The notes below the pieces were generated by a model, which ran no database searches, was not told the origin of the DNA, and saw only the letters and a program-made list of their open reading frames with translations. The position numbers and the translations under genes were made by a program. Positions 3,078-58,453 of a DNA stretch of 64,000 nucleotides are shown here, piece after piece. The stretch spans positions 1 through 64,000 of the IMG/VR virus record IMGVR_UViG_3300025536_000010; one strand, 5' to 3'. Within the stretch, counting starts at the first letter, position 1, and every line of letters begins with the position of its first letter.

Positions 3078-3095
3078 CTAAAAGCCAGTTTTGAG
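3078..3095 (+). repeat. Dispersed AAAAGCC-nn-TTTT motif copy
   Basis: CTAAAAGCCAGTTTTGAG, intergenic. Confidence 0.7.
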
Positions 3096-3108
3096 AACCT
3101 GGCCGACT

Positions 3109-3117
3109 TGTTATACT
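3109..3117 (+). promoter_or_regulatory. Extended -10 promoter element upstream of the tubulin operon
   Basis: TG-T-TATACT about 30 nt before the RBS/ATG at 3148. Confidence 0.5.
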
Positions 3118-3147
3118 CTGGGAGTCCGAAAGGCGAAAGGAGTCGCT

Positions 3148-3324
3148 ATGAGGAATCCTGCACTGATCGCGTGGCTGGCCAAACAAGCAGCTGTTACGTC
3201 TCGTTCGCGGGTCGTACCGGCCAAGGACGCCGAGAGCGTCGCCAAGGCCCTCAAAGAGGAGCCACCCACAGCTTCGCAGGCGGCGACGCGCTACGGCCGT
3301 AAACCTTATCTACGGGGACCATGA
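3148..3324 (+). CDS. Small hypothetical protein (58 aa)
   Basis: Strong RBS AAAGGAG; MRNPALIAWLAKQAA...; stop 1 nt before tubulin start. Confidence 0.6.
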   Translation: MRNPALIAWLAKQAAVTSRSRVVPAKDAESVAKALKEEPPTASQAATRYGRKPYLRGP

Positions 3325-3325
3325 C

Positions 3326-4603
3326 ATGGCTGATGACAAAGACCTCAACAAGTCGCTCGAAGCTGCCCAGCAGCGCCCTGTTCGCGCTGGTAAGCTGACG
3401 CCGGCCAAGAAGGAGGCCAGTGCCCCAGCGCCAGGTGCCAAGGGGCCTGGCAACATCGCCGCCCGCCTCAACCCTGCGGCCCACCAGCAGGCCACCAAGC
3501 AGGTCGTAGTCAACGACGACTTCGATTACGACACGGCGATGCACATGGCTTTCATCGGCGCCGGCCAGGGTGGCTCGCGCATCGCCAACAGTTTCTGGAA
3601 GCTGGGTTACCGCCGCGTGGGCATCTTCAATACCACCGAAAGCGACTTCGAGGGCCTGGAGGCTGAGATCCCCAAACTCTCGCTCGATATTGGCGGGGCT
3701 GCCAAGGACATGAAGTTTGCTCGGCAGGCCCTCGACGGCCGCACCGAAGAGATCTGGGATCTCATGATTCGGTCCTGGGGTAACAACCCAGACTGTGCTC
3801 TGGTTTGCGTCGGCCTGGGCGGTGGTTCGGGCTCCGGTTGCGCTCTGCCCATCGTGCAGCTGGCCCGCAAGTACATGGAGGCCAAGAATCGGCCGCCGCG
3901 CGTCGGTGCCATCGTCAGCCTGCCCAGCGTGACAGAGGGCCAAATCGTGGCTCGCAACGCCGTCACGGCCTTTGGTGAGTTGCTCCAGGCCAAGGTGAGC
4001 CCGCTGCTCATCATCGACAACAGCCGCGTCCATAGTCTGTATCGGCCGTCCATGAGTCAGCTGTTGCCCAAGAGCAACGAACTGGTCAGCCAGATGCTGC
4101 ACCTGTTCAACCAGCTGGCGGCCATCCATAGTCCGCACATCACCTTCGACCGTAATGAGTTTGCCCAGCTGCTCGATGGTGGTATCTGCGTCATGGGCTG
4201 CGCCGACATCAACAAGCTGGACAGCCCGGCGGACATCTCGGCCGCGATCCGCGACGAACTGGCCCAGAGCATCCTGGCCGAGGTTGATCTGCGCCGTGGG
4301 CGTAAAGCCGCCTGCCTGTTTGTGGGTCATCAGGACATTCTGGACTCGCTCGACCTGGACTATTTTGATGCTGGGTTCACCACGCTCGACCGCATCGTGG
4401 GCTCGGCGTACCAGGACAAGGACAAAGACCCCACGGTCATTCATCGTGGCCTTTACCCGGGTGTGGACGCTGGGTTACAGTGCTATACGATGATTTCGGA
4501 ACTCGACCCGCCTCGGGGTCGCCTCCAGGAGCTTGCCAAGAAAGGCGGGCTCGCCGTGACGCAAGGGGCGTCGGTGGCGAAACACCTGGGCGTCGGGGAC
4601 TGA
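3326..4603 (+). CDS. Tubulin/FtsZ-family GTPase (PhuZ/TubZ-like)
   Basis: FIGAGQGGSRIA, NTTESD, GLGGGSGSG tubulin signature, LPSVTEG, IIDN, T7-like TFDRNEF. Confidence 0.92.
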   Translation: MADDKDLNKSLEAAQQRPVRAGKLTPAKKEASAPAPGAKGPGNIAARLNPAAHQQATKQVVVNDDFDYDTAMHMAFIGAGQGGSRIANSFWKLGYRRVGIFNTTESDFEGLEAEIPKLSLDIGGAAKDMKFARQALDGRTEEIWDLMIRSWGNNPDCALVCVGLGGGSGSGCALPIVQLARKYMEAKNRPPRVGAIVSLPSVTEGQIVARNAVTAFGELLQAKVSPLLIIDNSRVHSLYRPSMSQLLPKSNELVSQMLHLFNQLAAIHSPHITFDRNEFAQLLDGGICVMGCADINKLDSPADISAAIRDELAQSILAEVDLRRGRKAACLFVGHQDILDSLDLDYFDAGFTTLDRIVGSAYQDKDKDPTVIHRGLYPGVDAGLQCYTMISELDPPRGRLQELAKKGGLAVTQGASVAKHLGVGD

Positions 4604-4633
4604 ACTACATACACGGCGGCCCCAGGTGCCATC

Positions 4634-5014
4634 ATGGACCGAGCTTTCAATGTCGATCCCTATGCGTGCGGGTCGTTGCCGCCGCGACCCGGACGCCTGT
4701 GCAACCCGCGCTACGACGCAGGGACAAGGCAGCACACCTTGTCCTTGCCGCCTTGCCCGCCCGGCGTAAAACGCCGGGCCGTGTTTTTCGAGGTGCGCGG
4801 CCAGGGCACCAGCACGGTGCAGGTTCGTCCCGGCCTCGACACCGTGAGCATCGCCTTGCCGCCCAACGCTTCCGTGGTGGCCTTTGTTATGCACTACGGG
4901 CCACACGGCGAGGCTGTCGCCGGTCCCTTGTCAGCCTTCCGGGCGACGACCAAGGCCCCACCAAGGCCCAAGCGCCCCAAGGTCAATCGTACTGAGGAGA
5001 GGACGCCGGCATGA
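4634..5014 (+). CDS. Hypothetical protein
   Basis: ORF coupled by ATGA overlap to next gene; basic C-terminus. Confidence 0.55.
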   Translation: MDRAFNVDPYACGSLPPRPGRLCNPRYDAGTRQHTLSLPPCPPGVKRRAVFFEVRGQGTSTVQVRPGLDTVSIALPPNASVVAFVMHYGPHGEAVAGPLSAFRATTKAPPRPKRPKVNRTEERTPA

Positions 5015-5319
5015 ACCAACCACCCTGCGACATCTGCCCGCACAGCAACAACGTCCAGCCGTGCGACCAGCCTTGCGTGTTCCTCATGGCGGTACTGCAC
5101 CTACCAGGTGGGACGCCCAAGGTCGTCACCTCGCCGCGCTACACGGTGGAGATGTCTCGCCTGGGCGAACTGGTCGACAAGATCCCCGATTTCGGCAACG
5201 ACATCGCCAACGAACTGCGCAACCAGCTGCAACTTCCGCCTGTCGCCAGTACGCTCTACGGCAAGGTGGAAATGGCCGGAGACACCAATGTCGATCAAAC
5301 CAAGCCTGAGCCAAAATAA
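5011..5319 (+). CDS. Hypothetical protein
   Basis: RBS GAGGAG, N-terminal Cys cluster CDIC..CDQPC. Confidence 0.6.
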   Translation: MNQPPCDICPHSNNVQPCDQPCVFLMAVLHLPGGTPKVVTSPRYTVEMSRLGELVDKIPDFGNDIANELRNQLQLPPVASTLYGKVEMAGDTNVDQTKPEPK

Positions 5320-5908
5320 AGCGAACGTCGTCATCGTGGACGACTTTTTCGAGAACCCCAATGACGTGCGCAACTTCGCCACGGGCATGCCCTACGTCCG
5401 TGAGGACACGCGCTACAAGGTCCAGCGCTCGCAGGAGCGTTACCTCTTCTCCGGCGTCAAGGAACGCTTCGAGGCCCTGCTGGGCAAGAAGATCACGGTC
5501 TGGGAGGCCCACGGTTTCAACGGCGTCTTCCAGCTGTCGGTCAGCGGCGACAAAGTCGTCTACCACAGCGATCATCAGAGCTATGCGGGCGTGGTCTACT
5601 TGACGCCGGACGCGCCGCCACAAAGCGGCACGGTGCTGATCCGCTCGAAGGGTAACAAACTGCGCTGCCCCGAGGAGGCCGTGAAAGCGAACCTCTCGAC
5701 CGAGCTAGCTTCGCGGCAAATGTACGGGGACGGTAACCCGGGCAAGCTGCTCGACCCAACTGCTTGGGAGATCGTCGACGTCATCGGTAACCGCTACAAC
5801 CGCCTGGCCATCTGGAATGCCCGTCTGGCCCATGCGGGCATGAACTACTTCGGCAACAACATCAACGATGGAAGGCTAGTACAAATGTACTTCTTTGACT
5901 GTGGGTGA
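5288..5908 (+). CDS. 2OG-Fe(II) oxygenase (DUF6445-like)
   Basis: VVIVDDFFENP, HSD metal motif (VYHSDHQSYAGVVYLTP), distal His (NRLAIWNARLAH), RLVQMYFFD. Confidence 0.8.
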   Translation: MSIKPSLSQNKANVVIVDDFFENPNDVRNFATGMPYVREDTRYKVQRSQERYLFSGVKERFEALLGKKITVWEAHGFNGVFQLSVSGDKVVYHSDHQSYAGVVYLTPDAPPQSGTVLIRSKGNKLRCPEEAVKANLSTELASRQMYGDGNPGKLLDPTAWEIVDVIGNRYNRLAIWNARLAHAGMNYFGNNINDGRLVQMYFFDCG

Positions 5909-6378
5909 TTTTCATGCTGACTTTGTGGGATACGAAAACGTGTACGACGTGTAAGAAAGAGAAACTGTCGGACCAGTTTCGTGTGGGGAGGCGAGACTGC
6001 GTCGAGTGCTCCAAAGAAAACTGTCGTGATTGGTACGCCAACAACAAGGAGCACGCTCGTCGCTATCACGCAAGCGCCGACCGAAGGGCGCGCTGTAAAA
6101 CCACGCACCTGCTGCGCACCTATGGGCTCTCGTACGAAGACTACGAGGCCCTCGTCACGAAACAAAAAGGTCGCTGCGCTATCTGCCGCAAGAAGTGCGT
6201 TTCCATGTCAGCGTATCGCGGACTCCGTGGTGCGGACGGGTCTTCTTTCCGCGTCGATCATTGCCACAAAACTGGCAGGGTTCGTGGTCTGTTGTGCGTA
6301 GAGTGCAACATTGGACTTGGCAAGTTCAAGGACGACGCCGGTTTACTGAAAAAGGCGTACGAGTATCTGGAAAAGTAA
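5905..6378 (+). CDS. Endonuclease VII-family (HNH-like) nuclease
   Basis: CAIC...VDHCHKTGRVRGLLCVECNIGLGKFKDD...AYEYL. Confidence 0.9.
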   Translation: MIFMLTLWDTKTCTTCKKEKLSDQFRVGRRDCVECSKENCRDWYANNKEHARRYHASADRRARCKTTHLLRTYGLSYEDYEALVTKQKGRCAICRKKCVSMSAYRGLRGADGSSFRVDHCHKTGRVRGLLCVECNIGLGKFKDDAGLLKKAYEYLEK

Positions 6379-6384
6379 AACGAC

Positions 6385-6609
6385 ATGCCTGACGTTATCA
6401 AACTGCACGACCTGGCTGGCAACTTCCTCTGCGAGGCCAAATTGTCTCCCAAGAAGAACAGGTCGTTGCTGCCCCTGATTGCCTGGTTCGATGAGGGCAG
6501 CAAGCGTCGGTATTTCTTGCAGCACCCACTGGCAGTCGAGAACTACCACGAGGTCGACTGCGTCGAAGACATGCTGCCCGTGGAGCCGCAACCATGCCAA
6601 ACACCCTGA
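6385..6609 (+). CDS. Hypothetical protein
   Basis: ORF in operon context. Confidence 0.55.
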   Translation: MPDVIKLHDLAGNFLCEAKLSPKKNRSLLPLIAWFDEGSKRRYFLQHPLAVENYHEVDCVEDMLPVEPQPCQTP

Positions 6610-7166
6610 CCTTTCGGGCGCACTGCTACGAGGAGTCGTGCGACCTGGGCGGTGTCGAGTACACCTGCCCCGCGTGCGGCAAAGACGACACGGACTACGA
6701 CGATCTGTGGTGGAAGCGCGACGAGTATGTACAGCCGGGCGGCTGGATCGACTTCTGTTGTTCCAGTTGCGCGCGGCGTATCGTCGCTTTCTACGAGGAC
6801 GGCGACATGGTCCTTTACGACGCCGTGCAGGTGCGTAAAGACTGGTGGGAGGGCGCAGTGGATAGCGGCGCTGACTTGCGTTACCTGCTCAGAAAGATTC
6901 AAAAGACCACGCCGCCTGGCGCGGAGCTGCGAAAGGACAACATCGTGGAAGTACAACTGATAAGCCGGATTGGTACGCCGCTGGGCACTGCCGAAGTTCT
7001 CAAGGATGCAACCGAAGGCGGTTTGGCCAGGCGCGTCCTTATCGTCGAGAACGTCAAGGGCGAGGTGCATCGCTGTTTCGAGCCCACCGAGGATAAACTG
7101 GTCTACAAGGAAGTCGATTTCGAGGAGATCAAAATCACGCCGCGCGAAGCGCCGAAGAAGGTCTGA
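6594..7166 (+). CDS. Hypothetical protein with N-terminal Zn-ribbon
   Basis: CPAC...CSSC Cys pairs. Confidence 0.6.
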   Translation: MPNTLTFRAHCYEESCDLGGVEYTCPACGKDDTDYDDLWWKRDEYVQPGGWIDFCCSSCARRIVAFYEDGDMVLYDAVQVRKDWWEGAVDSGADLRYLLRKIQKTTPPGAELRKDNIVEVQLISRIGTPLGTAEVLKDATEGGLARRVLIVENVKGEVHRCFEPTEDKLVYKEVDFEEIKITPREAPKKV

Positions 7167-7215
7167 GGTCCGCGCGGTTGCAGGCCGGTCGGCCAGCGCA
7201 AACAAGGAGGTTATC

Positions 7216-7665
7216 ATGTCCGGTCAGAACCTGTACGGGTCGTTCGGCAACACGATCCAGGTCAACCAGGGCGGGTTGTTCGACGAGATCCAGCACACTC
7301 AGGGGGGTCACCCCCACATCATGCAGTACCTGTGGACCAAGTATTGCAAGTACCTCCAGGACCAGGTGCAGGCGCGCCAGGCGAAAGGTTTGCCGTGCCT
7401 GAGCCTGTCCGAAGCGCTCCGCAAGGCCCCGGCGCTTGGCTTCGTTACCTGGGCCGCCGAGTTCTTGAAGGACTGTCGGCCTGTGCAAGCCTTCTTCGTC
7501 GACGAAAATCAGGGGCTGATCCTGGAGAACAATGACTGCGTCTGTATCTCTCCAGGCGTTCCTGTCCAGGGCACCATGCAGGACAGTGGTGCGGTTCAGG
7601 TCACGGAAGGCAGAAGTCGTGAGGGCAGTGAAGGCGTCATTCAGACGCCAGCCCTCAGAATCTAA
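7216..7665 (+). CDS. Hypothetical protein
   Basis: RBS AAGGAGG before ATG 7216. Confidence 0.7.
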   Translation: MSGQNLYGSFGNTIQVNQGGLFDEIQHTQGGHPHIMQYLWTKYCKYLQDQVQARQAKGLPCLSLSEALRKAPALGFVTWAAEFLKDCRPVQAFFVDENQGLILENNDCVCISPGVPVQGTMQDSGAVQVTEGRSREGSEGVIQTPALRI

Positions 7666-7680
7666 AAGCCACTATTTGAG
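7662..7680 (+). repeat. Dispersed AAAAGCC-nn-TTTT motif copy
   Basis: CTAAAAGCCACTATTTGAG overlapping the TAA stop. Confidence 0.65.
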
Positions 7681-7686
7681 GAACAC

Positions 7687-8442
7687 ATGGCAGCCAAGCA
7701 ACCGCAGCAGGAGCTTCACGAAAACCTCGTGGTCCTTCTCCAACACCTGTTCCATCAGAAGTTCTGTCCAGCCGAGGAGATCGACGCGCAGAAACGTGCG
7801 CACATCATGCCAGTCTACTTCTACGGCTGGCTGGATAAGCACATGAACATGATGAACGCCGAAGAGGAGTGCGCCGCTGCCGGCGTCTCGCTCGACACCT
7901 GGCATGTGCTGGAGGAGATCGTCAACTCGGGCGTCGCCGTCGAGCGCACTTTTCAGGTGTGGTACACCGTCGTCCTGGCGCACCGCCCGCAGCCGAAGGT
8001 CGACCTCGAACGCTGCACGGTCACCATGCAGCTGCACTACGCGGACGGTACGATCACGCCGATCCAGGTCATGCTGGACCGGCGCTTGATCGAGGGGCCT
8101 GGGTTCACGGACGGCTTGATTGCGGCCCAGCTGACCAGGCACATGCAAGCCTTCATCAGCGAGATCTTGGAAAGCGGTCTGGACGGTCTGCGCAAGAAGG
8201 GCAAGAACTATCGCGGTGGGACGCCCGAAGACCCCTTCGAGGTCATGATGGGCCTCATGCTCAAGCACATGATCCCCAAACTCCAGCCCGAGTACCGGCA
8301 GCCCGTCGAAGACTATGTGCGCTACGCTCAGGCGATTCTGCGCCCGGTCGTGCCGCCCGAGATGATCGCGCACTTCGAGCGCGAGAAGGCCAAGTCGGAG
8401 CCCCAGCCCGAAGGTCCAGCTCGGGGCGGCTGGGACGTCTAG
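7687..8442 (+). CDS. Hypothetical protein
   Basis: RBS GAGGA; GC3-rich codon pattern. Confidence 0.7.
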   Translation: MAAKQPQQELHENLVVLLQHLFHQKFCPAEEIDAQKRAHIMPVYFYGWLDKHMNMMNAEEECAAAGVSLDTWHVLEEIVNSGVAVERTFQVWYTVVLAHRPQPKVDLERCTVTMQLHYADGTITPIQVMLDRRLIEGPGFTDGLIAAQLTRHMQAFISEILESGLDGLRKKGKNYRGGTPEDPFEVMMGLMLKHMIPKLQPEYRQPVEDYVRYAQAILRPVVPPEMIAHFEREKAKSEPQPEGPARGGWDV

Positions 8443-10670: not shown

Positions 10671-11288
10671 ATGATGAACCGTCGTGAAGCCTTGAAAGCC
10701 GGCCTGGCGAGTTTGCTGACGGCGCTGAGTCCGTTCAAGGCCGCTGCCGATCCTGTTGTGGAAGCGTATGTCGCCAATGGTTTCGTGAACGAGGAACGGG
10801 TAGGCGACGATCTGATCGAGACGTACGCTTTCACCCGTGGTGTGCTCTTGGTCGGCGACATGACTCCTGGCTTGCTGGTCGCCGATGGTTCGTTCAGCGT
10901 GACTGTGCGCAAGGTGCAGCCCCGTTGTGATGTCAGCGGCTTGTTCACGCATCTCCTGGGTCCGTATCCCATCATGCAGGCCACGCATGACATCTTTGGC
11001 GACTGGGAGCGCTCGAAGACGAGCTTCTGGCGTCTGGGCCTGCTCAAGACGGACAAGACCTCGGTGTGGTTCAAGATCTCAAAACCACTTTTTACCCAGA
11101 TCGGCGTGAGCGTGGTGGCCCGGGTCAACAAACCGGGACAAACAGACAACCGGGGCGACGAGTTCGTGCCCCAATTCCCTGGCGACGATGGCACGATGAT
11201 GGTGACGGAGTGGGCGAACTTCATGAGTTGCGAAGAACCCAAACTCTGTCCAGCACCCAAGGATTATCAAATCCCGGGAGCACGCTAA
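10671..11288 (+). CDS. Hypothetical exported protein with twin-arginine (Tat)-like signal
   Basis: MMNRREALKAGLASLLTALSPFKAAA; RBS AAAGGAG. Confidence 0.65.
   Translation: MMNRREALKAGLASLLTALSPFKAAADPVVEAYVANGFVNEERVGDDLIETYAFTRGVLLVGDMTPGLLVADGSFSVTVRKVQPRCDVSGLFTHLLGPYPIMQATHDIFGDWERSKTSFWRLGLLKTDKTSVWFKISKPLFTQIGVSVVARVNKPGQTDNRGDEFVPQFPGDDGTMMVTEWANFMSCEEPKLCPAPKDYQIPGAR
11078..11096 (+). repeat. Dispersed motif, weaker copy inside CDS
   Basis: CTCAAAACCACTTTTTACC. Confidence 0.4.
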
Positions 11289-11342: not shown

Positions 11343-14300
11343 ATGAACCCAGCAGCCGCTCCAGGCCCCGTTATCAACAACATCAACGGCGGTATGGCCC
11401 AGCAGGGTCGGTTCTCGGGCATGTTCGGCATGCACCCGGGTTTCAACTTCATGGCGGCGACGCAGCACGCCCAGCGGAACCCAAATGCAGCGGCTCACCC
11501 GACGATTCCGCAGCAGGGTATGGCCACAGCGGGTGGAGTGCAGCAGGCCCTGCAAAAGGCGAGTTTCGCGGCGCGGGGAGATTACCTGGACGACGTGCTT
11601 TTCGAGCTTTGGGAGGGGCAGAAGCGGGCGGAAGCACAGACAGCGGGGTCGATGGCGGCCGGAGCGAGCGCAACTGCGCCTGCGGGTGGCCAAAATGGTG
11701 GGCAGCAGCCGAACAGGTCGACGCGGGGCATGATGGGTGGCGGTTATCGCGGTGCGCGCGGTGGTGGCGGGCAAAACCACGGAGTCGTGGGACAAACCAG
11801 CGGGCCGCAACCGCTCGTGGGGAACGTGAACCCACTCGGGCAAATGGGCAATCCGATGGCTACCGCCGCCCGACAAGGCATGGCGAGCCTCGCCCCCCGC
11901 CCCTTTGGGGGGACAATGGCCCCACAGCCGCTAAAAATGGCGATGATGGTGCCCGGTCCTGGCGGCATGGCTCCGAACCCAGGCGCCACGGCCCCCATGC
12001 CGCCGCCTCCGGGGCCTCCGGGCATGGCTGCGCCTGGTGGCGGTGGGCCGCTGCCGCCGCCTCCTCCGAATGGCGGCGCACCGATCCCCGGACAGCCTCC
12101 GGTCGACCCCATGACAGGCCAACCGATGGACCCTGCTGCGATGGGCGGCGGTGCGCCTCCGGGGCCTATCGACCCCATGACGGGACAACCTGTGCAGGCT
12201 CCAATGGCCTCGCCGCCGGCTCCGCCGTTGCCTGCTAACCCGCGGCCTGCGCAAGCCTCGCCCAAGGACAGCCAACAGGCCCAGCGGGAGGCAAACATGC
12301 TGCGCATGCTGGAGCAAAAACAGCAGTCGGAGGCATCTGCGACCCCGCAGGACGCCAACGATGACATCCAGGCGCAGAGCATGGCTTTGGCCAAGACGGC
12401 TGAGTCGCCTGGTATGCGGATGATGCGTGAGAACCACAACCGCATCACGCTGGGCGTGCTGGGCGAAGACCTCCGCCGCAAGTACGGTATGGGGCCGTTC
12501 TCCAAGCGTGCCTCCGAGAGTGATTCGTTCTCCGACATGAACGAGGACGATACGTTGGGCAGCCCCAAGGCCATGAGCAAAGGCTGGCAGTGGCGCTACA
12601 TGAACAAGGACGTCGACGAGGGCCTCAGTCAGTGGTTGCCCAGGCTGTTCAAGAGCCAGCACACGCCTGTCAGTGAACTGCTGGCCTCGCCGGGCAAGCA
12701 GGGGCTGCTCGGCGGCCTGGGCGGGCTCGCGTTGGGTGGCGCCGGCGGTGCGCTGGGCGCCCAACATCTCGGTGCAAACCCGGTGCTCGGTGGTTTAGGT
12801 GGCGCCGGGCTTGGGGCGATCCTGGGCGGCCTCAGCGGCTATGGCTCGCGCCGCAAGAAGAATGACAAGCTGATCGACGCCATGCGTTTCATGCCGCCGG
12901 GAGCCACACTGGGCGAGATGGACCAGCTGGAGGCAGCCAAGAAAGCACCCAAGCCAGACCCCATCGCCGGCTCGGCGGTCCAAAAACTGGCTTTTGAGAA
13001 ATTCGCCCAGGCGCTCAAGCAGAGCATGGAGGTCGAGCAGGCTGTCCCGCTCGGTCTGGCGGGCGTGGGCGCTGGTGTTGGTATGTTCGCTGGCGGTGCC
13101 CAGGGACGCGACCTGGCCCAACGGAACATGCAGGCCCAACTGCCCGGTCAGATCGAGGCCGCACGGCTCCAGCACCGCAACTCGATGAACCAGGGCCTCG
13201 ACAAGATGTACGGCCGTGGCCTCGACAACTGGGCGAAGCGGCGGGCGGGTATCCTCCAGGAACGCATGGCCATCGGCCCGGACGGCAATTTCAAGGTGCC
13301 GCGTCCGGCGGGGAATGAGGGCTGGGAGCGGATGCGCGATCAGCATGGGCAACTCGCGGCTTCGGGGCCACAGCTGCGCCAGGGTTTCAATCCGCAGCAG
13401 GCCGCAGCCGCCAAGCAGAAGTTCCTGGCTTCGGGGCAGGCTCAGCAGTTCATCCAGCAGCAACGTGGGGCCTGGCAGAACCAGCTGGGACGCATGCAGA
13501 GTCAGGCACCTGGACAGGTTGCCGCGGCCGGGCGTCGGGGCATGCTGCGCGGTGGTTTGGCGGGCGGTTTGGGCGGCCTGGCTGTGGCGAGCGCCCCCAT
13601 GCTCATGGGCATGTTCGGTGGTAAGCAGGCCGAGGATGGCAGCATCTATCTGGAGAAGCAGGCCAAGGAGGTCACCTACACGGACCCCAAAACGGGCAAG
13701 CAGGTGACGACGGACCATGAGGCCCTTGGTAAGAAATGCGCGGAGATGCTCTACAAGACCGTCGACGACGGGGACACGCAGCTTATCCACGCCGCCATGC
13801 TCGATCACCTGCTGCGTCTCAATAAGCGCTCGGCTGATGCCGAGCGTGACACAAACTGCCCGCTCTGCGGCATGCTGCACGAGTTCGGGCTGGCGTGCAG
13901 CACCAAAAAGGCCGAGCAAGAGGATACCAGTCTCAAGTCGCCCAACCGCAGCGCCTCGGGCGAGAGCAAGGGCCTGACCTTCGCGCACCGTGCGGACGAT
14001 CACGCCACGGGTCCAGCGGCCTGGCAGAGCATCGACCGTTTCCTCTCGAAAGACGTCACCGTGAAGACGGACCCCTACAAGGGCAAGCACGGCGGCACCA
14101 AGAAGGACACGGTCAACTACAAGCTCGCCGCCCTCAGTGGTGTCGAGTCGGGCTTGCTGGGCCTCAAGGGGCGCCTGATGCAGCCAGGCGGTTGGCTGGA
14201 TGAACTCATGGATGCCCAACGCAGCCCCGTTCAAGCGGGCGGTTCGACCTTTGGTACGCTGCCCAAACTCAAGCCACCCGATCTCAAGGGTTTGCTGGGC

Positions 14301-17060: not shown

Positions 17061-17279
17061 GTGGACCGCGACCCCTATACGCAGTGCCTGGTCGTCAAGC
17101 ATAACCTGAGCCGCGTGGCCTGGCTGCCGGCTAAGCTGAGCACGGTCGGCCAGGCCCTGCGGTTCAAGCGGGACGACGGCAGCTGGGATGATGGCTGGAA
17201 GGTACTGGCCGCTTACCAGACGCTGCCTGAGTATCAGATCCCAGAGGGCCGGTTGACCAAGGCATGCAAGCGGAGATGA
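17061..17279 (+). CDS. Hypothetical protein
   Basis: QCLVVK..VAWLP..W..GWKV pattern; GTG start. Confidence 0.55.
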   Translation: MDRDPYTQCLVVKHNLSRVAWLPAKLSTVGQALRFKRDDGSWDDGWKVLAAYQTLPEYQIPEGRLTKACKRR

Positions 17280-18361
17280 CCATGCAGAACGACAACCGCA
17301 ACCCGTACATCACAGGGCCACGCTACCGCTGCATGCACGACACGCCCGCCCCCAGGCGCTCTCGCTTTTTCCACCCCGAGGCGGATGGTACGCCGCGCTG
17401 TTTCCCCTGGCGCTGGCTACTCTGGGCGCTGCTGGCCCTGCTCGTCGTCGTGCTGCTGAGCCTGGGCAAGGCGCACGGTCAGGAGCCGCCGGCCGATCCC
17501 GACGTACCGAAGATCAAGATCGCCCAAGAACACCGCGTCGCCAACCGCACGGACCACGGCATCTGCTGGTTCTGCTCGGCGGAGATGCTGGGCAAGCACC
17601 TGGGCATCATGCCGCTGCATACGCTCACCGAGCGGGTCGTGCAGACAGGCGTGGGCCTGCGTGGTGGGGCTACCGTGGAAGCGGTCGATCACTGGGTCAA
17701 GACCCTGGGCGTCAAGCCGCGCGTCAACCCGCACGGACGTAGCCAGGAAGGCGTGCGCTGGTTGCAAGCACAGCTGGATGCGGGCTTGCCCGTGGTTGTG
17801 AGCTACTACGATGGTCGCTACAAGGACGGCAGTCGAGCGACTCATGCCGTGCTGCTGACGCACATCACGCGCCAAAAAGTGGCTTTTGGAACTGGCCAGG
17901 ACTACTCGGTCCATTACGTCGATCCCAACGGCATGAAAGACCAGCGCTACAACTGGGCCTGGTTCTGGGACGCCTGGACGGGCAGGGCCTACACCTTCGA
18001 CCCCCGCGAGCAGCCGCCGCAGTTCGTGCAGGCTCCGCCTATGGGCGATCCGCGGCGACCTCTGGTGGCCACGCATTGCGTCAAGAAGATCGTCCACCCC
18101 GACGTGCAAGCGCGTATTCAGCGCTACGTCAATCCGCCTCTGGAGATCCGCCAGCAGCAGGTGCCAGGCACGCCGACGCACCAGCTGCCCTACAAGACGG
18201 ACCAGTACGTCAACGCGGTATTCAACGTCAAGCTGGCGAGCAACCAGGACATCAAGGACGGCGTTATGCGGCCTGACGATCAGTTCCGCTTTGGCTGCTA
18301 CACCTACCACGGGCACGACTACTTCTCCGAGTACAGGCAGGCGACTGGAGCGAAGAAGTAA
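17276..18361 (+). CDS. Membrane-anchored papain-fold cysteine peptidase (C39-like)
   Basis: TM helix, then GICWFCSAEML (Cys), THAVLL (His), YVDPN (Asp). Confidence 0.65.
   Translation: MTMQNDNRNPYITGPRYRCMHDTPAPRRSRFFHPEADGTPRCFPWRWLLWALLALLVVVLLSLGKAHGQEPPADPDVPKIKIAQEHRVANRTDHGICWFCSAEMLGKHLGIMPLHTLTERVVQTGVGLRGGATVEAVDHWVKTLGVKPRVNPHGRSQEGVRWLQAQLDAGLPVVVSYYDGRYKDGSRATHAVLLTHITRQKVAFGTGQDYSVHYVDPNGMKDQRYNWAWFWDAWTGRAYTFDPREQPPQFVQAPPMGDPRRPLVATHCVKKIVHPDVQARIQRYVNPPLEIRQQQVPGTPTHQLPYKTDQYVNAVFNVKLASNQDIKDGVMRPDDQFRFGCYTYHGHDYFSEYRQATGAKK
17872..17889 (-). repeat. Dispersed motif copy inside CDS (reverse orientation)
   Basis: Reverse complement CCAAAAGCCACTTTTTGG. Confidence 0.6.
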
Positions 18362-24745: not shown

Positions 24746-24763
24746 CTAAAAGCCACTTTTGAG
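24746..24763 (+). repeat. Dispersed AAAAGCC-nn-TTTT motif copy
   Basis: CTAAAAGCCACTTTTGAG, intergenic. Confidence 0.7.
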
Positions 24764-24782
24764 AAGCTCCAGGGAGGGAACG

Positions 24783-39400: not shown

Positions 39401-39970
39401 TTGATCGAAGACCTGCTCAAGACCTACGCCTACAAGACGGGCGAGTTCACCCTCGCTTCGGGACAGACGTCCGACGAGTACCTGGACGTCAAGGAAGCCA
39501 TGCACCACCCCTACGCCGCGCGCCGGCTGGTACAGTGCGTGCTGGATGAGTTCGTCGGCACCGAGATCGCCCTGGCCGGCGTGGCGGACGGCAGCATCGC
39601 CATCGCCGCCGTTGCCGTCTACGTTCGCAACTTGTACTCGCCGCAATCGTGTCACCTGCTGACAATCCTCAAGGAGCGCAAGCAACACGGCACCAAACAG
39701 CAGATCGTGGGCCTGGACAACCTCAAGGATTTCAAGAACGACTACAGGTTCGTTGGGATCATTGAGGATGTCTGGACCACGGGCGAGTCGACGGCCAAGG
39801 CGATCCGCGCAGCTCAGGCGGAAGGATTGAACGTACGCCAGTGCGTGGCCGTCGTCGACCGCGAGGCGGGCGCTGTGGCGCGGCTGACGAAAGAGTTCCC
39901 CAAGATTGTCTTCTCCGGCGTTACGACGCTCAAGGCCGTCCGCGACGGCAAGCGCTGGCATGAGGGCTAA
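39401..39970 (+). CDS. pyrE: Orotate phosphoribosyltransferase
   Basis: GEFTLASGQTSDEYLD, RKQHGTKQ, PRPP-binding IEDVWTTGES, AVVDRE; TTG start. Confidence 0.88.
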   Translation: MIEDLLKTYAYKTGEFTLASGQTSDEYLDVKEAMHHPYAARRLVQCVLDEFVGTEIALAGVADGSIAIAAVAVYVRNLYSPQSCHLLTILKERKQHGTKQQIVGLDNLKDFKNDYRFVGIIEDVWTTGESTAKAIRAAQAEGLNVRQCVAVVDREAGAVARLTKEFPKIVFSGVTTLKAVRDGKRWHEG

Positions 39971-39984
39971 AAGCCGTTTTTGAG
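39967..39984 (+). repeat. Dispersed AAAAGCC-nn-TTTT motif copy
   Basis: CTAAAAGCCGTTTTTGAG overlapping the pyrE stop. Confidence 0.7.
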
Positions 39985-39999
39985 AACACCGCTTCACAG

Positions 40000-40035
40000 A
40001 AAACCACCCTCCCTACGGAGAGGCGTGGTTTTTTT
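40000..40035 (+). terminator. Intrinsic terminator
   Basis: AAAACCAC..CTCC-CTAC-GGAG..GTGGTTTT followed by a T run. Confidence 0.7.
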
Positions 40036-40097
40036 CTTAGCTATTAGGTAGACTCGCATTTGATTCAGAGATGTCTCAAAGGCCAGGGAGGGCTACC

Positions 40098-40969: not shown

Positions 40970-41047
40970 CGCCGGGCTAAATAAGCGGTAGGGTTGTGTC
41001 ACAATAAATGATGGGAATCCCTACCCTTTTATCCTGGAGAGCGCTAC

Positions 41048-45460: not shown

Positions 45461-45804
45461 AAGCCGTCCAGGACGAACTCGACAAGGGCATGGCGCGTCT
45501 GTTGAGTGATGCCGGCATCGACCCGGAAGACCGCGACATGGTCAGTGAGGCCGCTGCGGCTTTGCGGGAGTACGAGCGGCGGGAGGCGTACTGGGGGCAG
45601 TTCGCTGGGCGGGCGCAGCCAATGCCGGACATCACCAAGCTAACGACGGACATAAAACAGCTGTGCCAGCGCCTGTCTGCGGTGCTCGGTGTCACCCTAC
45701 CGCGGAACCCGTTTTTCGACACGCAACTGGGCGAGTCCCACGTTCCAAAAAACGGCTTTGAGGAGTGCGATACCCCCGTTGTTGTGACCGTGGAAAAATC
45801 TTGA
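45457..45804 (+). CDS. Hypothetical protein
   Basis: ATGA overlap. Confidence 0.6.
   Translation: MKAVQDELDKGMARLLSDAGIDPEDRDMVSEAAAALREYERREAYWGQFAGRAQPMPDITKLTTDIKQLCQRLSAVLGVTLPRNPFFDTQLGESHVPKNGFEECDTPVVVTVEKS
45745..45762 (-). repeat. Dispersed motif copy inside CDS (reverse orientation)
   Basis: Reverse complement CTCAAAGCCGTTTTTTGG. Confidence 0.5.
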
Positions 45805-45823: not shown

Positions 45824-45852
45824 TTGACAGGGGTCAAACCCTGGCATAACCT
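45824..45852 (+). promoter_or_regulatory. Sigma70 promoter
   Basis: TTGACA-N17-TAACCT with AT-rich upstream tract. Confidence 0.75.
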
Positions 45853-51312: not shown

Positions 51313-51525
51313 ATGAGCGCTCCCACCAATCTGAGCGAGCGCGAGCGGGACGTCCTGCACGGTATCGTGGAGGACAAAACCTACCGAGAGATCGCGGCCG
51401 GCATGGGCGTCTCTACCGAGACGGTGAAAACCTATGCCAACCGCCTCCGGCGCAAGCTCGGCATCAACAGCAAGACGGGGCTGGCTTTGTGGGCCGCCTC
51501 ACACCTAGACGCCTATGGGTTTTGA
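51313..51525 (+). CDS. Stand-alone LuxR-type HTH regulator
   Basis: LSERERDVL..TYREIA..MGVSTETVKTY..RLRRKLG. Confidence 0.9.
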   Translation: MSAPTNLSERERDVLHGIVEDKTYREIAAGMGVSTETVKTYANRLRRKLGINSKTGLALWAASHLDAYGF

Positions 51526-52050: not shown

Positions 52051-52069
52051 CTAAAAGCCGGTTTTTGGA
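52051..52069 (+). repeat. Dispersed AAAAGCC-nn-TTTT motif copy
   Basis: CTAAAAGCCGGTTTTTGGA, intergenic. Confidence 0.7.
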
Positions 52070-52080
52070 GGCTGAGCGCA

Positions 52081-54918: not shown

Positions 54919-54935
54919 GTTAGTAGACCACCGCG

Positions 54936-55005: not shown

Positions 55006-55014
55006 GAGGGGGCC

Positions 55015-55284: not shown

Positions 55285-55290
55285 TCCGTA

Positions 55291-55320: not shown

Positions 55321-55326
55321 GCCGCT

Positions 55327-55549: not shown

Positions 55550-55574
55550 CCTTTCAACCACCACGGAGGGTGTC

Positions 55575-55898: not shown

Positions 55899-55944
55899 TC
55901 GCCCGCGTCGAACGAACAACCATCGACGGCTCACGGAGGAGCGC

Positions 55945-56397: not shown

Positions 56398-56404
56398 GGT
56401 AATC

Positions 56405-56959
56405 ATGTCGATCCTGGCCACACACGATGGCCCTCCCCCGTGGGCGAGGGCCATGTTCACCTTGGGGCAAGAGAAAGCCGCGGCAGTCGCGGACCCGCCC
56501 CAGGTGTCTTACGACCTTGCCGGCCAGTTGTTCCTGGCGGCCAACGGTTGGCTGCTCCTGTCCGTGCCGAACGCTTTCGTTCACGGCCTCTATGCTACCA
56601 TCGACGAGCGCGGCGTAGAGTTACCGCCAGGCAAAGACGGCGGGCCGATGAACGCGCACATCAGTGTGATGAAACCGAAAGAGATTGAGCTACTCGGCGG
56701 GGCCGACAAGATCAGCGAGCGCGGCAAGCAGTTCCACTATACGATCAGCCGCCTGTACACAGTCGAGCCGTCAGGCTGGCCGGAGATGAGCAAAGTCTGG
56801 TTTGTGCGCGTTCACTCGCCAGAGTTGCAGGAGTTGCGGAGGAGTTACGGGTTGTCGTCCCTACCCAACGACGGGAAGCATGACTTCCATATTAGCGTCG
56901 CCGTCAGAAGGAGGGGCGTCTTGGGTAGGAACGACAACCGTAAAGGCGAGGCAGCTTAG
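56405..56959 (+). CDS. 2H phosphoesterase-family protein
   Basis: Two HxS motifs (AHISV, FHISV) about 76 aa apart. Confidence 0.7.
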   Translation: MSILATHDGPPPWARAMFTLGQEKAAAVADPPQVSYDLAGQLFLAANGWLLLSVPNAFVHGLYATIDERGVELPPGKDGGPMNAHISVMKPKEIELLGGADKISERGKQFHYTISRLYTVEPSGWPEMSKVWFVRVHSPELQELRRSYGLSSLPNDGKHDFHISVAVRRRGVLGRNDNRKGEAA

Positions 56960-57159
56960 GTTAGTTGTGCAGCAGGGGTGGTTGGCGCGGTTGGTTGGTT
57001 CGCCTGGAGCTTCGCCAGGACTTCCTCCCGGTGAACGGGCACCTTCCGGGGGGCTTCGATGCCGAGGCGGACTTTGCCGCCGTCGATGTCGACAACCGTG
57101 AGGGTGATGTCGTCTCCGATGACGATCTTTTCACCTAACTTGCGAGAGAGTACCAACAT
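56956..57159 (-). CDS. csrA: Carbon storage regulator CsrA/RsmA
   Basis: MLVLSRKLGEKIVIGDDITLTVVDIDGGKVRLGIEAPRKVPVHREE; RBS AAAGGAG on minus strand. Confidence 0.96.
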   Translation of the reverse strand: MLVLSRKLGEKIVIGDDITLTVVDIDGGKVRLGIEAPRKVPVHREEVLAKLQANQPTAPTTPAAQLT

Positions 57160-57210
57160 GTTAGACTCCTTTCACGTCGAAGTGAGCCCTCCAATGACCA
57201 GCAACGCATA

Positions 57211-57226
57211 AGGGTAAGGATACCCT
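57211..57226 (+). promoter_or_regulatory. AGGA-loop hairpin (CsrA-site-like) in leader of the 57260 gene
   Basis: AGGGTA-AGGA-TACCCT, then SD AAGGAG at 57244. Confidence 0.6.
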
Positions 57227-57259
57227 CTTTTGGGGGACAAAGCAAGGAGATTTAGAAAC

Positions 57260-58453
57260 ATGCTAGACTTCGCTGTCCCCACCCTGACCCGCTACGACAC
57301 CATCGTCGCAGCGCTAGCCGGGCTTGAGAAGCTGGCGCTCACCGCCTCACAGCTTACCCGCGAAGCCGCCAAAGTCGACCCCAATCCGACTGACGCCCAG
57401 AAGGAGAGCGGCAACTACCGCAAAGGCCACGTCGCCTGGAAGGGTCTGAACATCACTATCGAGACGGCGGCTGGTCAGGTCCGCCGCGGGGTGGGCAAGG
57501 ATGGCAAGCCGTGGCAGACCAAGATGAGGGACCACTATGGCTATGTTAAAGGTACTGTCTCCGACGCAGACGGAGATCATGTCGACGTGTTCATTAGTTG
57601 CGACCAGCAGCCCGATACCAGGGGGCCGCAGCGAGCCCAACCGGGGTGGGGATGGCTTCGCTCGGAACTCGTCCACGTTATCAACCAGGTCGACCCCGAT
57701 ACCGGCAAGTTCGACGAGCACAAGGTTGTGCTGGGCTGCCTGGATGAAGAGTCTGCGCGCCAATCTTACCTGCGCAACTATGAACCGGGGTGGCAAGGAC
57801 TTGGGTCGGTCACTGCCCTCACCCTGCCGCAGTTCAAATGGTGGCTCGACCGCGCCGACACGTCTAAGGAAATCAAAGAAGGGTTTTTTGCAGCACCGGC
57901 GAATCGTAAGAAATCAGCGACCGACCTGATCCAAAAAACGGCTTTTGACGCCACTGCCACACACATCCTGGTCGTCAAGCGCGCCGAGGACCGCGAAACG
58001 CCTTTCACCGTCGCTGTTGATCTGGACGGCACCCTGGCCGAAAAAGAGGAACCGTTCGACCCAACCTCTATCGGTACGCCGCGCCAGAAAGCCATTGACT
58101 ACGTTCGTCTCTTCCGCGAAGCGGGGGCACGGATTATCATCTTCACGGTTCGCGGCGACAAAGAGTTGGTGGAGGCGTGGCTGGAGGAACACGACGTTCC
58201 CTACGATTACGTCAACGAGAACCCGGACCAGCCCGAAGACGCTTCGGGTAAGGTCATCGCCGACGCTTACTGGGACGACAAGGCGTTCAACGCCGAAGAC
58301 CCGGATGAGTTCGGACCCACGATCCTGCGGAAGGTCATGGGAGGCAAGGACGAGGCGCACGCTGCGCCTGCGCTCCACATCACAGTGGTCAAGAACACGA
58401 CGTTCGTGTTCTCGGCCCCGGAGTTACTGGATGCCATGAAGGAGGCCGCATGA
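57260..58453 (+). CDS. Phage inorganic-pyrophosphatase-like (InPase) domain fused to HAD phosphatase
   Basis: PTDAQKESGNYRKGH..HYGY..DGDHVDVF..FDEHKVVLG; then VDLDGTLA, IFTVR, KVIADAYWDDKA. Confidence 0.8.
   Translation: MLDFAVPTLTRYDTIVAALAGLEKLALTASQLTREAAKVDPNPTDAQKESGNYRKGHVAWKGLNITIETAAGQVRRGVGKDGKPWQTKMRDHYGYVKGTVSDADGDHVDVFISCDQQPDTRGPQRAQPGWGWLRSELVHVINQVDPDTGKFDEHKVVLGCLDEESARQSYLRNYEPGWQGLGSVTALTLPQFKWWLDRADTSKEIKEGFFAAPANRKKSATDLIQKTAFDATATHILVVKRAEDRETPFTVAVDLDGTLAEKEEPFDPTSIGTPRQKAIDYVRLFREAGARIIIFTVRGDKELVEAWLEEHDVPYDYVNENPDQPEDASGKVIADAYWDDKAFNAEDPDEFGPTILRKVMGGKDEAHAAPALHITVVKNTTFVFSAPELLDAMKEAA
57931..57949 (-). repeat. Dispersed motif copy inside CDS (reverse orientation)
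   Basis: Reverse complement GTCAAAAGCCGTTTTTTGG. Confidence 0.6.

What the first reader, a model, noticed from the sequence alone, without database searches (positions are those of the whole stretch)
3078..57949. AT-rich quasi-palindrome AAAAGCC-nn-TTTT repeated about every 2-9 kb in both orientations: candidate genome-organisation or segregation site
Seen: 11 copies. Forward at 3078, 7662, 11078, 24746, 33836, 39967 and 52051; reverse at 12980, 17872, 45745 and 57931; a weak one near 29337. Five copies sit inside CDSs and use AAA/TTT/GCT codons unusual for this GC3-rich genome. One (39967) is followed immediately by a terminator, so a simple + strand promoter role does not fit. Established: dispersed palindromes of this kind are bound by dimeric proteins (parS/ParB, matS/MatP), and TubZ partition systems use centromere repeats. 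Inference: a binding site for a phage DNA-organising, segregation or packaging factor, possibly linked to the tubulin.
Basis: partly seen in the sequence, partly recalled or inferred. Interest (0 to 1): 0.75.

Follow-up and report, generated by a model that had tools for sequence, protein, structure and literature searches.

The report
Evenly spaced palindromic gene-start signal
A 20-base AT-rich near-palindrome occurs 37 times, about every 6 kb, in this uncultivated 235-kb tubulin-encoding phage, mostly just upstream of genes, so it is most likely the phage's own transcription start/control site rather than a DNA-segregation site.

Summary
All 11 listed copies exist; the "weak one" near 29337 is not a copy. 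The window is the first 64 kb of a 234,886-bp virus record with 250 of 254 called genes on the + strand. The full element is about 20 bp: C-Y-AAAA-G-CC-R-N-TTTT(T)-K-R-G. A matrix scan finds 37 copies genome-wide.

- 21 of 37 are intergenic, against 8.5% intergenic DNA (p = 1e-13).
- 16 lie inside genes, against 0.4 expected after synonymous-codon shuffling.
- Spacing is unusually even: mean 6.2 kb, CV 0.40 against 0.97 for random placement.
- Orientation is mixed, 24:13.

A relative whose RNA polymerase beta is 69% identical carries a more perfect palindrome (CTCAAAACCGGTTTTGAG) at 9 orthologous places. Two of these sit at the same codons of two genes. A third lineage encodes the same peptide with GC-rich codons and has a different palindrome in one shared slot.

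Intergenic sites sit after terminators or stop codons and 2-27 nt before start codons. No second promoter box is nearby.

Best reading (about 0.5): a promoter/operator bound by a dimeric phage factor, with the conserved GerE/LuxR-type 70-aa protein as the best candidate, serving the phage's own RNA polymerase. A pure operator and a ParB/KorB-like loading array remain live rivals. No link to the tubulin was found.

The parts
3078..3097 (+). Motif copy, forward (CTAAAAGCCAGTTTTGAGAA). It lies 3 nt after the stop of gene 2031-3077 and upstream of a doubtful 58-codon ORF and the tubulin gene. The place is conserved in the relative.
   Evidence: 32.1 bits; context; orthologous site rel 2215
7662..7681 (+). 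Motif copy, forward. It overlaps the stop of gene 7216-7665 and lies 10 nt before the ATG of 7687-8442. Its right flank serves as the Shine-Dalgarno sequence.
   Evidence: 28.1 bits; not conserved in the relative
11078..11097 (+). Weak motif variant (CAAAACCACTTTTT) inside gene 10671-11288.
   Evidence: 19.7 bits; peptide KISKPLF
12978..12997 (-). Motif copy, reverse, inside the 1598-aa gene 11343-16139. It encodes QKLAFEKF with rare codons. The relative has reverse copies in the same repeated peptide.
   Evidence: 30.2 bits; codons; rel 12464 and 12851
17870..17889 (-). Motif copy, reverse, inside gene 17276-18361 (QKVAFG).
   Evidence: 32.3 bits; not conserved in the relative
24746..24765 (+). 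Motif copy, forward, 4 nt after a stop codon and 22 nt before the ATG of 24783-25652.
   Evidence: 33.0 bits
33836..33855 (+). Motif copy, forward, 4 nt after a stop codon and 18 nt before the ATG of 33869-34807. The place and orientation are conserved in the relative.
   Evidence: 28.8 bits; rel 26237
39967..39986 (+). Motif copy, forward, overlapping the stop of 39401-39970. The place is conserved in the relative, where it directly precedes the next gene.
   Evidence: 32.3 bits; rel 35624
39998..40036 (+). Intrinsic terminator (hairpin plus U7), followed by a -10-like box (TAGACT). This is an insertion relative to the related phage, between the 39967 motif and gene 40098-40895.
   Evidence: dG -19.3, z -3.55
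45743..45762 (-). Motif copy, reverse (one mismatch), inside gene 45433-45804, 44 nt before its stop.
   Evidence: 29.7 bits; not conserved in the relative
52051..52070 (+). Motif copy, forward, intergenic, 15 nt before the ATG at 52081 (634-aa ORF). The place is conserved in the relative, and a variant is kept in L040.
   Evidence: 31.3 bits; L032 2547; L040 6977-7023
57929..57948 (-). Motif copy, reverse, inside the InPase-HAD gene 57260-58453 at codons Q-K-T-A-F. The relative has the palindrome at the aligned codons K-T-G-F.
   Evidence: 28.0 bits; protein alignment
51313..51525 (+). Candidate binder: a 70-aa GerE/LuxR-type helix-turn-helix protein. It is syntenic and its recognition helix is invariant in the two relatives that keep the motif.
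   Evidence: PF00196 E=3.5e-16; PDB GerE/NarL/DosR matches

Best explanation
The element is the phage's own transcription-unit start signal: a single-box promoter or promoter-plus-operator of about 20 bp, AT-rich in a 62% GC genome.

Shown:
- It has 37 copies, about one per 6 kb, along a genome transcribed almost entirely in one direction.
- Most copies fill the gap between a stop codon or intrinsic terminator and the next ribosome-binding site or start codon.
- No other conserved box lies within 45 bp.
- Copies inside genes are written with rare synonymous codons.
- Places, and mostly orientations, are kept in a related phage.
- The element is dyad-symmetric.

Inferred:
- A dimeric phage helix-turn-helix protein binds the dyad. 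The best candidate is the conserved GerE/LuxR-type 70-aa protein at 51313-51525.
- This protein directs the phage-encoded multisubunit RNA polymerase (beta 66967-70113; beta' 72027-73787 and 76627-80658; sigma-like protein 123377-124105) to open the A4/T4 tracts and start in or just beyond them.
- Forward copies would then give short leaders whose purine-rich flank is the Shine-Dalgarno sequence. Reverse copies would give near-leaderless mRNAs.
- Because recognition is through a symmetric dimer, the site works in either orientation.
- The even spacing divides the genome into units of about 6 kb.
For: - Motif statistics.
- 21 of 37 sites are intergenic against 8.5% intergenic DNA, p = 1e-13.
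- After the Shine-Dalgarno sequence, this is the most enriched word upstream of starts.
- Terminator-motif-SD-ATG modules occur at 64785, 76190, 94024 and 154842, with the terminator's T-tail abutting the motif. That leaves no room for another promoter.
- In longer spacers 8-9 sites are start-proximal and 3 stop-proximal.
- No second conserved box lies within +-45 bp.
- Sigma70-like promoters are not enriched: 3 against 5 on the control strand.
- The genome has its own beta/beta' genes and a sigma-like protein, but no T7-like polymerase.
- The literature reports that jumbo phages with their own polymerases carry a phage-specific, AT-rich, bioinformatically detectable motif upstream of operons (PMC7598289).
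- Nine orthologous places are shared with the relative. Where the same beta' peptide occurs in a third lineage it is encoded with GC-rich codons and has no motif.
- That third lineage has a different 22-bp palindrome in the same terminator-X-gene slot.
- The GerE-type protein is co-conserved with the motif.
Against: - 13 of 37 copies are inverted although 250 of 254 genes are on one strand. An ordinary directional promoter would then make antisense RNA.
- Palindromy is typical of operators, not of polymerase or sigma promoters.
- Spacing is far more regular (CV 0.40) than I would expect for promoters. For comparison, my own rough recollection of phage T7 promoter positions gives a CV of about 0.9. 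That figure is not a tool result.
- 16 copies are inside genes, some far from any downstream start.
- Two copies (39969, 109672) are followed by a hairpin.
- Only one polymerase set was detected, so the phiKZ/AR9 virion-polymerase analogy is incomplete.
- There are no transcript data: the only run holding the phage is DNA.
Confidence: 0.5

Rival explanations
1. Pure operator. The dyad is only a binding site for a dimeric phage regulator (GerE/LuxR-type or another) that represses, road-blocks or otherwise modulates read-through transcription at gene boundaries. It has no promoter activity of its own.
For: - It is a quasi-palindrome here, a perfect 18-bp palindrome in the relative, and a different palindrome in a third lineage.
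- It is used in both orientations.
- A GerE-type HTH with an invariant recognition helix is co-conserved.
- The size and 7-3-7 half-site layout fit LuxR/NarL-type dimers. This comparison is from my own knowledge.
Against: - No promoter box is available for it to act on within 45 bp.
- In four modules the site directly follows a terminator and directly precedes the SD, so a read-through target is not evident.
- Sigma70-like promoters are too few to serve 250 genes.
- The centre CC-R is asymmetric and never the perfect palindrome in this genome.
Confidence: 0.2
2. Genome-organisation array. The sites are loading or anchoring points for a DNA-sliding or bridging protein (ParB/Noc/KorB-like or other). 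They are spaced about 6 kb apart so the whole genome is coated, compacted, positioned or silenced. The intergenic bias arises mainly because a 20-bp AT-rich dyad is costly inside GC-rich genes.
For: - Spacing CV is 0.40 against 0.97 +- 0.15 for random placement, P < 5e-5, with a maximum gap of 12.6 kb.
- The relative has a similar mean gap of 6.1 kb even where individual sites have turned over.
- Orientation does not track gene direction.
- Intragenic copies are conserved.
- A ParB/Noc-like protein with a GHRR box and HTH is encoded at 215703-216491.
- KorB shows that a ParB-family clamp can use dispersed palindromic operators for gene control (PMC11790492).
Against: - The ParB-like protein has only distant homologues (44% identity or less) and none in the relatives that keep the motif.
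- Sites prefer the start-proximal side of long spacers and follow terminators.
- Orientation correlates with start-codon architecture (Fisher p = 0.018), which an architectural site would not predict.
- No tubC-like iterons lie near the tubulin gene.
- No parS-like palindrome lies next to the ParB-like gene.
Confidence: 0.15
3. RNA-level element. The A4-N5-U4 stretch acts in the mRNA as an unstructured AU-rich ribosome-loading or re-initiation spacer, or as an RNase processing site, ahead of selected genes.
For: - Sites lie 2-27 nt upstream of start codons.
- Five reverse sites lie between a stop codon and an SD-less ATG.
- The region is unstructured when folded.
Against: - The specific centre occurs as GCCR or as its complement YGGC on the mRNA strand. 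An RNA reader would see these as different sequences.
- 16 copies lie inside genes, far from starts.
- Dyad symmetry is conserved across lineages.
- There is no Rfam match.
Confidence: 0.05

Closest known systems
Phage-specific AT-rich early-promoter motifs of jumbo phages that encode multisubunit RNA polymerases (phiKZ, AR9, PhiR1-37; review PMC7598289)
   Same: A conserved, AT-rich, lineage-specific motif detectable by sequence alone upstream of operons. It occurs in a phage that carries its own beta/beta' genes, and the motif differs between related phages.
   Different: - Here only one polymerase set is detectable, and it is much closer to cellular enzymes (PF00562 184 bits).
- A sigma-like protein is present.
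- The motif is dyad-symmetric and used in both orientations.
- It is spread evenly over the whole genome rather than over early regions.
- No TSS data exist.
LuxR/NarL/GerE-family operators (dimeric HTH on inverted heptamers such as the NarL 7-2-7 sites; this comparison is from my own knowledge)
   Same: An inverted repeat of about 16-20 bp with half-sites about one helical turn apart. A stand-alone GerE-like HTH protein is encoded nearby and is co-conserved with the motif.
   Different: - There is no adjacent sigma-type core promoter.
- There are 37 evenly spaced copies, including conserved intragenic ones.
- The centre is asymmetric.
- Binding is untested.
KorB-OB global regulatory/partition system of plasmid RK2 (PMC11790492)
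   Same: A palindromic operator dispersed over the replicon and linked to transcription control. A ParB-family CTPase-like protein is encoded in this genome. The OB core TTTTAGCGGCTAAAA even shares the GCTAAAA half-site.
   Different: - OB lies 4-10 bp or 45 to >1000 bp upstream of sigma70 promoters, and none are seen here.
- The half-sites are in the everted order here (A-tract first).
- The phage ParB-like protein is not conserved in motif-bearing relatives.
- No KorA/OA analogue was identified.
parS/ParB, NBS/Noc and matS/MatP chromosome-organisation sites
   Same: Short palindromes bound by dimers, tolerated inside genes, with multiple dispersed copies.
   Different: - Those sites are confined to origin or terminus regions, or excluded from them, and show no preference for gene starts.
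- The sequences differ.
- No evidence of spreading or of a ParA partner was obtained.
TubZRC / tubC centromeres
   Same: A phage or plasmid tubulin is present (window 3326-4603).
   Different: tubC is a local array of iterons next to tubR-tubZ. No tandem iterons exist near the tubulin gene, and the motif is genome-wide.

Membership tests
Jumbo-phage polymerase-specific promoter motif (phiKZ/AR9 type) | Conserved AT-rich motif upstream of operons, found by sequence analysis alone and specific to the phage lineage | tested here: met
   37 copies, 21 intergenic. The motif is absent or different in relatives L030, L031, L025, L026 and L018.
Jumbo-phage polymerase-specific promoter motif (phiKZ/AR9 type) | Transcription start about 10 nt downstream of the motif centre | not testable with these tools
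   Only a DNA run holds the phage.
Jumbo-phage polymerase-specific promoter motif (phiKZ/AR9 type) | Two split polymerase sets (virion and non-virion) | tested here: not met
   PF00562 and PF00623 each hit one locus only. A very divergent second set cannot be excluded.
Jumbo-phage polymerase-specific promoter motif (phiKZ/AR9 type) | Motif orientation follows the direction of the downstream genes | tested here: not met
   24 forward and 13 reverse copies, with 250 of 254 genes on the + strand.
LuxR/GerE-type operator | Inverted repeat with half-sites about 10 bp apart | tested here: met
   CTAAAAG-N3-CTTTTAG-like dyad here. Perfect CTCAAAACCGGTTTTGAG palindrome in the relative.
LuxR/GerE-type operator | Cognate GerE/LuxR HTH protein encoded and co-conserved with the site | tested here: met
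   Window 51313-51525, PF00196 E = 3.5e-16. Identity is 72% and 61% to the L040 and L041-type proteins, with an invariant recognition helix.
LuxR/GerE-type operator | Direct, specific binding of the protein to the site | not testable with these tools
   Needs EMSA or DAP-seq.
parS/ParB centromere | ParB-CTPase with HTH encoded by the replicon | tested here: met
   Protein at 215703-216491 has ParB_N plus an HTH. The GHRR box aligns with the GERR box of Noc/Spo0J.
parS/ParB centromere | Sites few and clustered near parAB or the origin | tested here: not met
   37 sites evenly spread from 3 to 226 kb. None lies next to the ParB-like gene.
parS/ParB centromere | Binder conserved wherever the site is conserved | tested here: not met
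   Only 5 homologues at 44% identity or less, none from motif-bearing relatives. Those relatives' assemblies are incomplete, so this is weak.
KorB/OB global operator | Operator 4-10 bp or 45 to >1000 bp upstream of a sigma70-type core promoter (PMC11790492) | tested here: not met
   No conserved -35/-10 within +-45 bp. Start codons lie 2-27 nt downstream.
TubZRC centromere (tubC) | Array of tandem iterons adjacent to tubR-tubZ | tested here: not met
   No array in 1-8000, only three 2-copy chance rows. There is one motif copy upstream of the tubulin gene.
matS/MatP | GTGACRNYGTCAC palindromes confined to one macrodomain | tested here: not met
   The sequence is different and the distribution is genome-wide. 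A MatP homologue was not searched for.
Hairpin-type promoter (N4 virion polymerase) or structured RNA | Stable stem-loop with covarying arms | tested here: not met
   dG is -0.9 to -4.8 kcal/mol, not better than shuffles. Positions 5 and 9 do not covary. No Rfam hit.

The most novel reading that the evidence does not exclude
The sites form a genome-wide, evenly spaced array (about one per 6 kb, kept at that density in a relative even where single sites have moved). From this array a phage DNA-binding protein loads or anchors to organise the whole 235-kb chromosome, and at the same time sets transcription-unit boundaries. This would be a KorB-like fusion of chromosome architecture and gene control in a jumbo phage, independent of site orientation.
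Probability: 0.2. Interest if true: 0.8.

Novelty: new variant of a known kind. Interest (0 to 1): 0.55.

Why it matters
This clade of uncultivated jumbo phages is large: more than 860 RNA polymerase beta homologues at E <= 1e-50. Members carry a tubulin, a cellular-type beta/beta' pair and a sigma-like protein, and no transcription signal is known for them.

- A 20-bp element that marks the transcription units gives a way to annotate operons and predict regulation in these genomes.
- It also allows the cognate factor to be found by motif-protein covariation.
- Its dyad symmetry, orientation independence and even spacing are not what ordinary promoters show. It may therefore reveal either a factor-directed way of starting transcription with a phage multisubunit polymerase, or a coupling between genome architecture and transcription.
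- Short, portable, factor-dependent elements of this kind are also useful parts for synthetic biology.

Tried and rejected
- **Transcript evidence.** The run search found only the source DNA run from a subsurface metagenome. No reads were laid.
- **Structured RNA or hairpin promoter.** The motif does not fold and has no Rfam hit.
- **T7-like single-subunit polymerase.** The motif's layout resembles T7/SP6 promoters (specificity region, AT-rich tract, G-purine start), but PF00940 is absent. That family rang in none of the control genomes, so its absence here is not shown.
- **Host sigma70 promoter reading of the motif.** The spacing to start codons is too short, and sigma70-like patterns are not enriched.
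- **Host regulon site.** A scan of 185,579 species genomes gave 56 single hits, mostly in AT-rich taxa, and no genome with several. The IMG/VR scan gave 5 unrelated hits.
- **tubC-like iterons near the tubulin gene.** None found.
- **parS-like palindrome next to the ParB-like gene.** None found.
- **Do the flanks of reverse copies follow the + strand or flip with the core?** Inconclusive: mean 4.8 against 3.2 bits, 8 of 13 sites.
- **Orientation switch along the genome.** None: 20 runs against 17.9 expected.
- **De novo palindromes in more distant relatives.** Only GC-rich noise.
- **Function of downstream genes.** PHROG and Pfam annotation mostly returned no function.

Full report
**Setting.** The window is bases 1-64,000 of a 234,886-bp IMG/VR virus record. 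It is estimated complete, has 62.4% GC, and comes from a subsurface metagenome. A codon-usage gene caller that I wrote gives 254 genes, 250 of them on the + strand, covering 91.5% of the DNA.

- The genome has one detectable multisubunit RNA polymerase set: beta at 66967-70113, and beta' in two genes at 72027-73787 and 76627-80658.
- It also encodes a sigma70-like protein with regions 3 and 4 (123377-124105) and a stand-alone GerE/LuxR-type HTH of 70 aa (51313-51525).
- A ParB/Noc-like protein lies at 215703-216491.
- No T7-like polymerase was found, though the search for that family rang in no control genome either.
- The closest isolated phages are only about 30% identical in beta (Salmonella phage Arash, Vibrio phages). 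In metagenomes the clade is large.

**The observation.**
- AAAAGCCNNTTTT occurs 7 times exactly and 10 times with at most one mismatch in the window. Shuffles give 0.00 and 0.43.
- The whole genome has 16 exact copies and none of the reversed control.
- AAAA-N5-TTTT occurs 27 times against 2 for TTTT-N5-AAAA.
- Aligned copies show an element of about 20 bp: t-C-Y-AAAA-G-CC-R-N-TTTT(T)-K-R-G-R. No further conserved position lies within 45 bp on either side.
- A matrix scan at 19 bits or more finds 37 sites. The place near 29337 scores 4 bits.

- Synonymous-codon shuffling gives 0.42 intragenic sites (maximum 2 in 200 shuffles) against 16 observed.
- The intragenic copies nearly all encode x-K-x-x-F-[EG], using AAA, TTT, CAA, GCT, GGA or CTA. 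These are 3-28% choices for their amino acids.
- Spacing is regular. The mean gap is 6194 bp, CV 0.40, maximum 12.6 kb. Random placement gives CV 0.97 +- 0.15, and none of 20,000 trials was as regular.
- Orientation is 24 forward and 13 reverse, interleaved, with no switch point.

**Position relative to genes.**
- 21 of 37 sites are intergenic although only 8.5% of the genome is (p = 1e-13).
- After the Shine-Dalgarno sequence, CTAAAAG and AAAAGCC are the most enriched words in the 60 nt before starts.
- Typical layouts are stop codon, 0-6 nt, motif, SD, ATG. An alternative is terminator hairpin, T-tail, motif, SD, ATG. The second layout occurs at 64785, 76190, 94024 and 154842, where the T-tail runs into the motif.
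- Start codons follow the 13-bp core by 2-27 nt.
- In seven forward sites the purine-rich right flank is itself the ribosome-binding site.
- Both orientations occur directly upstream of + strand genes.
- Five of eight reverse intergenic sites have an ATG 2-6 nt after the core and no SD, against one of twelve forward sites (Fisher p = 0.018).
- Other terminators in the genome are followed by -10-like boxes or by a bipartite GCTAAATAW...CACAATA motif. The dyad therefore occupies the same slot as other promoter-like elements.
- Sigma70-type patterns as such are not enriched.

**Relatives.** Proteins from the RNA polymerase region led to several related contigs.

- One relative (Logan contigs; beta 69% identical; GC 68%) was followed for 76.7 kb, syntenic with our 1-78 kb.
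  - It has 13 sites, with a mean gap of 6066 bp and CV 0.57.
  - Their consensus is CT(C/A)AAA(A/T)CCGG(A/T)TTTGAG, in places a perfect 18-bp palindrome.
  - Nine of our fourteen sites in the shared region have a counterpart at the orthologous place: 3080, 12983, 33838, 39969, 52053, 57934, 64785, 73103 and 76190. Orientation is the same in 7 of 8 decidable pairs.
  - Five of our sites (7664, 11080, 17875, 24748, 45748) and four of its sites are not shared, yet the density is kept.
- Two shared sites are inside genes at the same aligned codons.
  - In the InPase-HAD protein, ours reads Q-K-T-A-F and the relative's K-T-G-F.
  - In beta', the peptide is L-K-S/T-V/I-F-G.
- A third lineage (L031; beta 65% identical) encodes that same beta' peptide with CTC AAG AGC GTG TTC GGG and has no motif there.
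  - In the terminator-X-gene slot that corresponds to our 76190 it carries a different 22-bp dyad, ATTRGAAT-N6-ATTCYAAT. The dyad is seen twice in 17 kb.
- L040, whose GerE-like protein is 72% identical in the multiple alignment (76% by BLASTP), keeps a variant (GGCCAAAAAGCACTATTTGGCC) in the slot of our 52053.
- More distant relatives lack the motif in the stretches fetched.
- The slot of 39969 in the relative is simply stop-motif-SD-ATG. The terminator and -10-like box that follow our copy are therefore an insertion (fold).

**What this means.**
- The element is selected at the DNA level, is inherited, and is specific to a sub-lineage.
- Its dyad symmetry, kept while the sequence changes between lineages, points to recognition by a symmetric dimer.
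- Reading it in the mRNA is unlikely. The centre appears as GCCR or as YGGC on the coding strand, and the sequence does not fold.
- Its position says that it is tied to the beginning of transcription or translation units.
- With no other conserved box nearby, and with terminators directly in front of it, the simplest reading is that the dyad is itself where transcription begins.
- The review of jumbo-phage polymerases states that each such phage has a lineage-specific AT-rich motif upstream of its early operons that proved to be the promoter (PMC7598289). This is the nearest precedent.
- Recognition through a dimeric factor would explain the symmetry and the orientation independence. The co-conserved GerE-type protein is the best candidate, because its recognition helix is invariant in the three motif-bearing phages.
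- This step and the start position are inferences.

**Why I keep rivals.**
- Orientation independence, palindromy and regular spacing are not promoter properties.
- They fit an operator without promoter function. They also fit an array of loading sites for a DNA-organising protein, as in ParB/parS, Noc/NBS or KorB/OB.
- KorB shows that a ParB-family clamp can use dispersed palindromic operators to control promoters (PMC11790492).
- Against the ParB version:
  - The phage's ParB-like protein has only five distant homologues, none from motif-bearing relatives.
  - There is no partner palindrome by its gene.
  - The sites show start-proximal placement and an orientation-dependent start-codon architecture.
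- Nothing links the motif to the tubulin. One of 37 copies lies upstream of it, in both phages, and no iterons are present.

**Verdict.**
- The segregation and tubulin interpretation is not supported as stated. Its core inference, a dispersed dyad bound by a dimeric phage protein, is supported.
- Confidence by reading:
  - Transcription-unit start signal for the phage's own machinery: about 0.5.
  - Pure operator: about 0.2.
  - Organisation array: about 0.15.
  - RNA-level element: about 0.05.
- It is a new variant of a known kind. It is of moderate interest now, and of high interest if the even spacing turns out to be functional.

Noticed in passing
window 56956-57159 (- strand): This is the only minus-strand gene in the window. 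It is a 67-aa ORF whose syntenic counterpart in the relative carries PF02599 (CsrA, a translational regulator that binds GGA motifs). A phage-encoded CsrA conserved in this clade.
   Followed up: partly
window 40976-41006; also about 100.85 kb and 150.55 kb of the genome; L041 1270-1434: A second, bipartite promoter-like motif, GCTAAATAW-N16-19-CACAATAR. It sits after terminators, has three copies in the genome, and is conserved at the orthologous place in the relative. It may be the target of the phage sigma-like protein.
   Followed up: partly
G000 123377-124105 (L035:378-1106): A 242-aa protein with sigma70 region 3 (E = 1.8e-9) and a weak region 4. This looks like a phage-encoded sigma-like factor alongside cellular-type beta/beta' genes.
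   Followed up: partly
window 45824-45852: A near-consensus sigma70-type promoter, TTGACA-N17-TAACCT, in a 261-nt spacer. Similar TTGAC...TAnnnT and TTGTCCCCC...GTATAGT boxes occur at matching places in relatives L040 and L041.
   Followed up: no
G000 215703-216491 (L036:704-1492): A ParB/Noc-like protein with a conserved GHRR (CTP-binding) box and an HTH. Its few homologues come from Planctomycetota MAGs, a hint at the host or at the gene's origin.
   Followed up: partly
window 11343-16139 and the relative's 1409-aa gene: A very large protein of unknown function. It contains a repeated peptide [LQ]K[LTS][AG]F[EK]K[FL]A that hosts the DNA motif once here and twice, 387 bp apart, in the relative.
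   Followed up: partly
G000 200875-204267 (L039:376-3768): A DNA polymerase A fused to an N-terminal uracil-DNA glycosylase-superfamily domain and a 3'-5' exonuclease domain.
   Followed up: no
homologues of G000 66967-70113: Many RNA polymerase beta homologues in this phage clade are 1400-1800 aa long. They carry intein/homing-endonuclease domains (PF14528, PF14890) or are fused to beta' domains (PF00623).
   Followed up: no
window 3148-3324: A 58-codon ORF with an SD lies between the 3080 motif and the tubulin gene. Its GC3 is only 0.62, and the relative has just about 60 nt here, so it may not be coding.
   Followed up: partly
G000 about 210025 onward: An ORF of at least 55 codons starts at the ATG 4 nt after the 210008 motif. 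My gene caller missed it. Several of the long 'intergenic' stretches probably hold unrecognised genes as well, so the 8.5% intergenic figure is an upper bound.
   Followed up: no
window 59418-61811 and 57260-58453: Nucleotide-metabolism genes sit just upstream of the polymerase cluster: a B12-type ribonucleotide reductase with an ATP-cone, and an InPase-HAD protein. In the relative the latter is fused to an acetyltransferase domain (807 aa).
   Followed up: no
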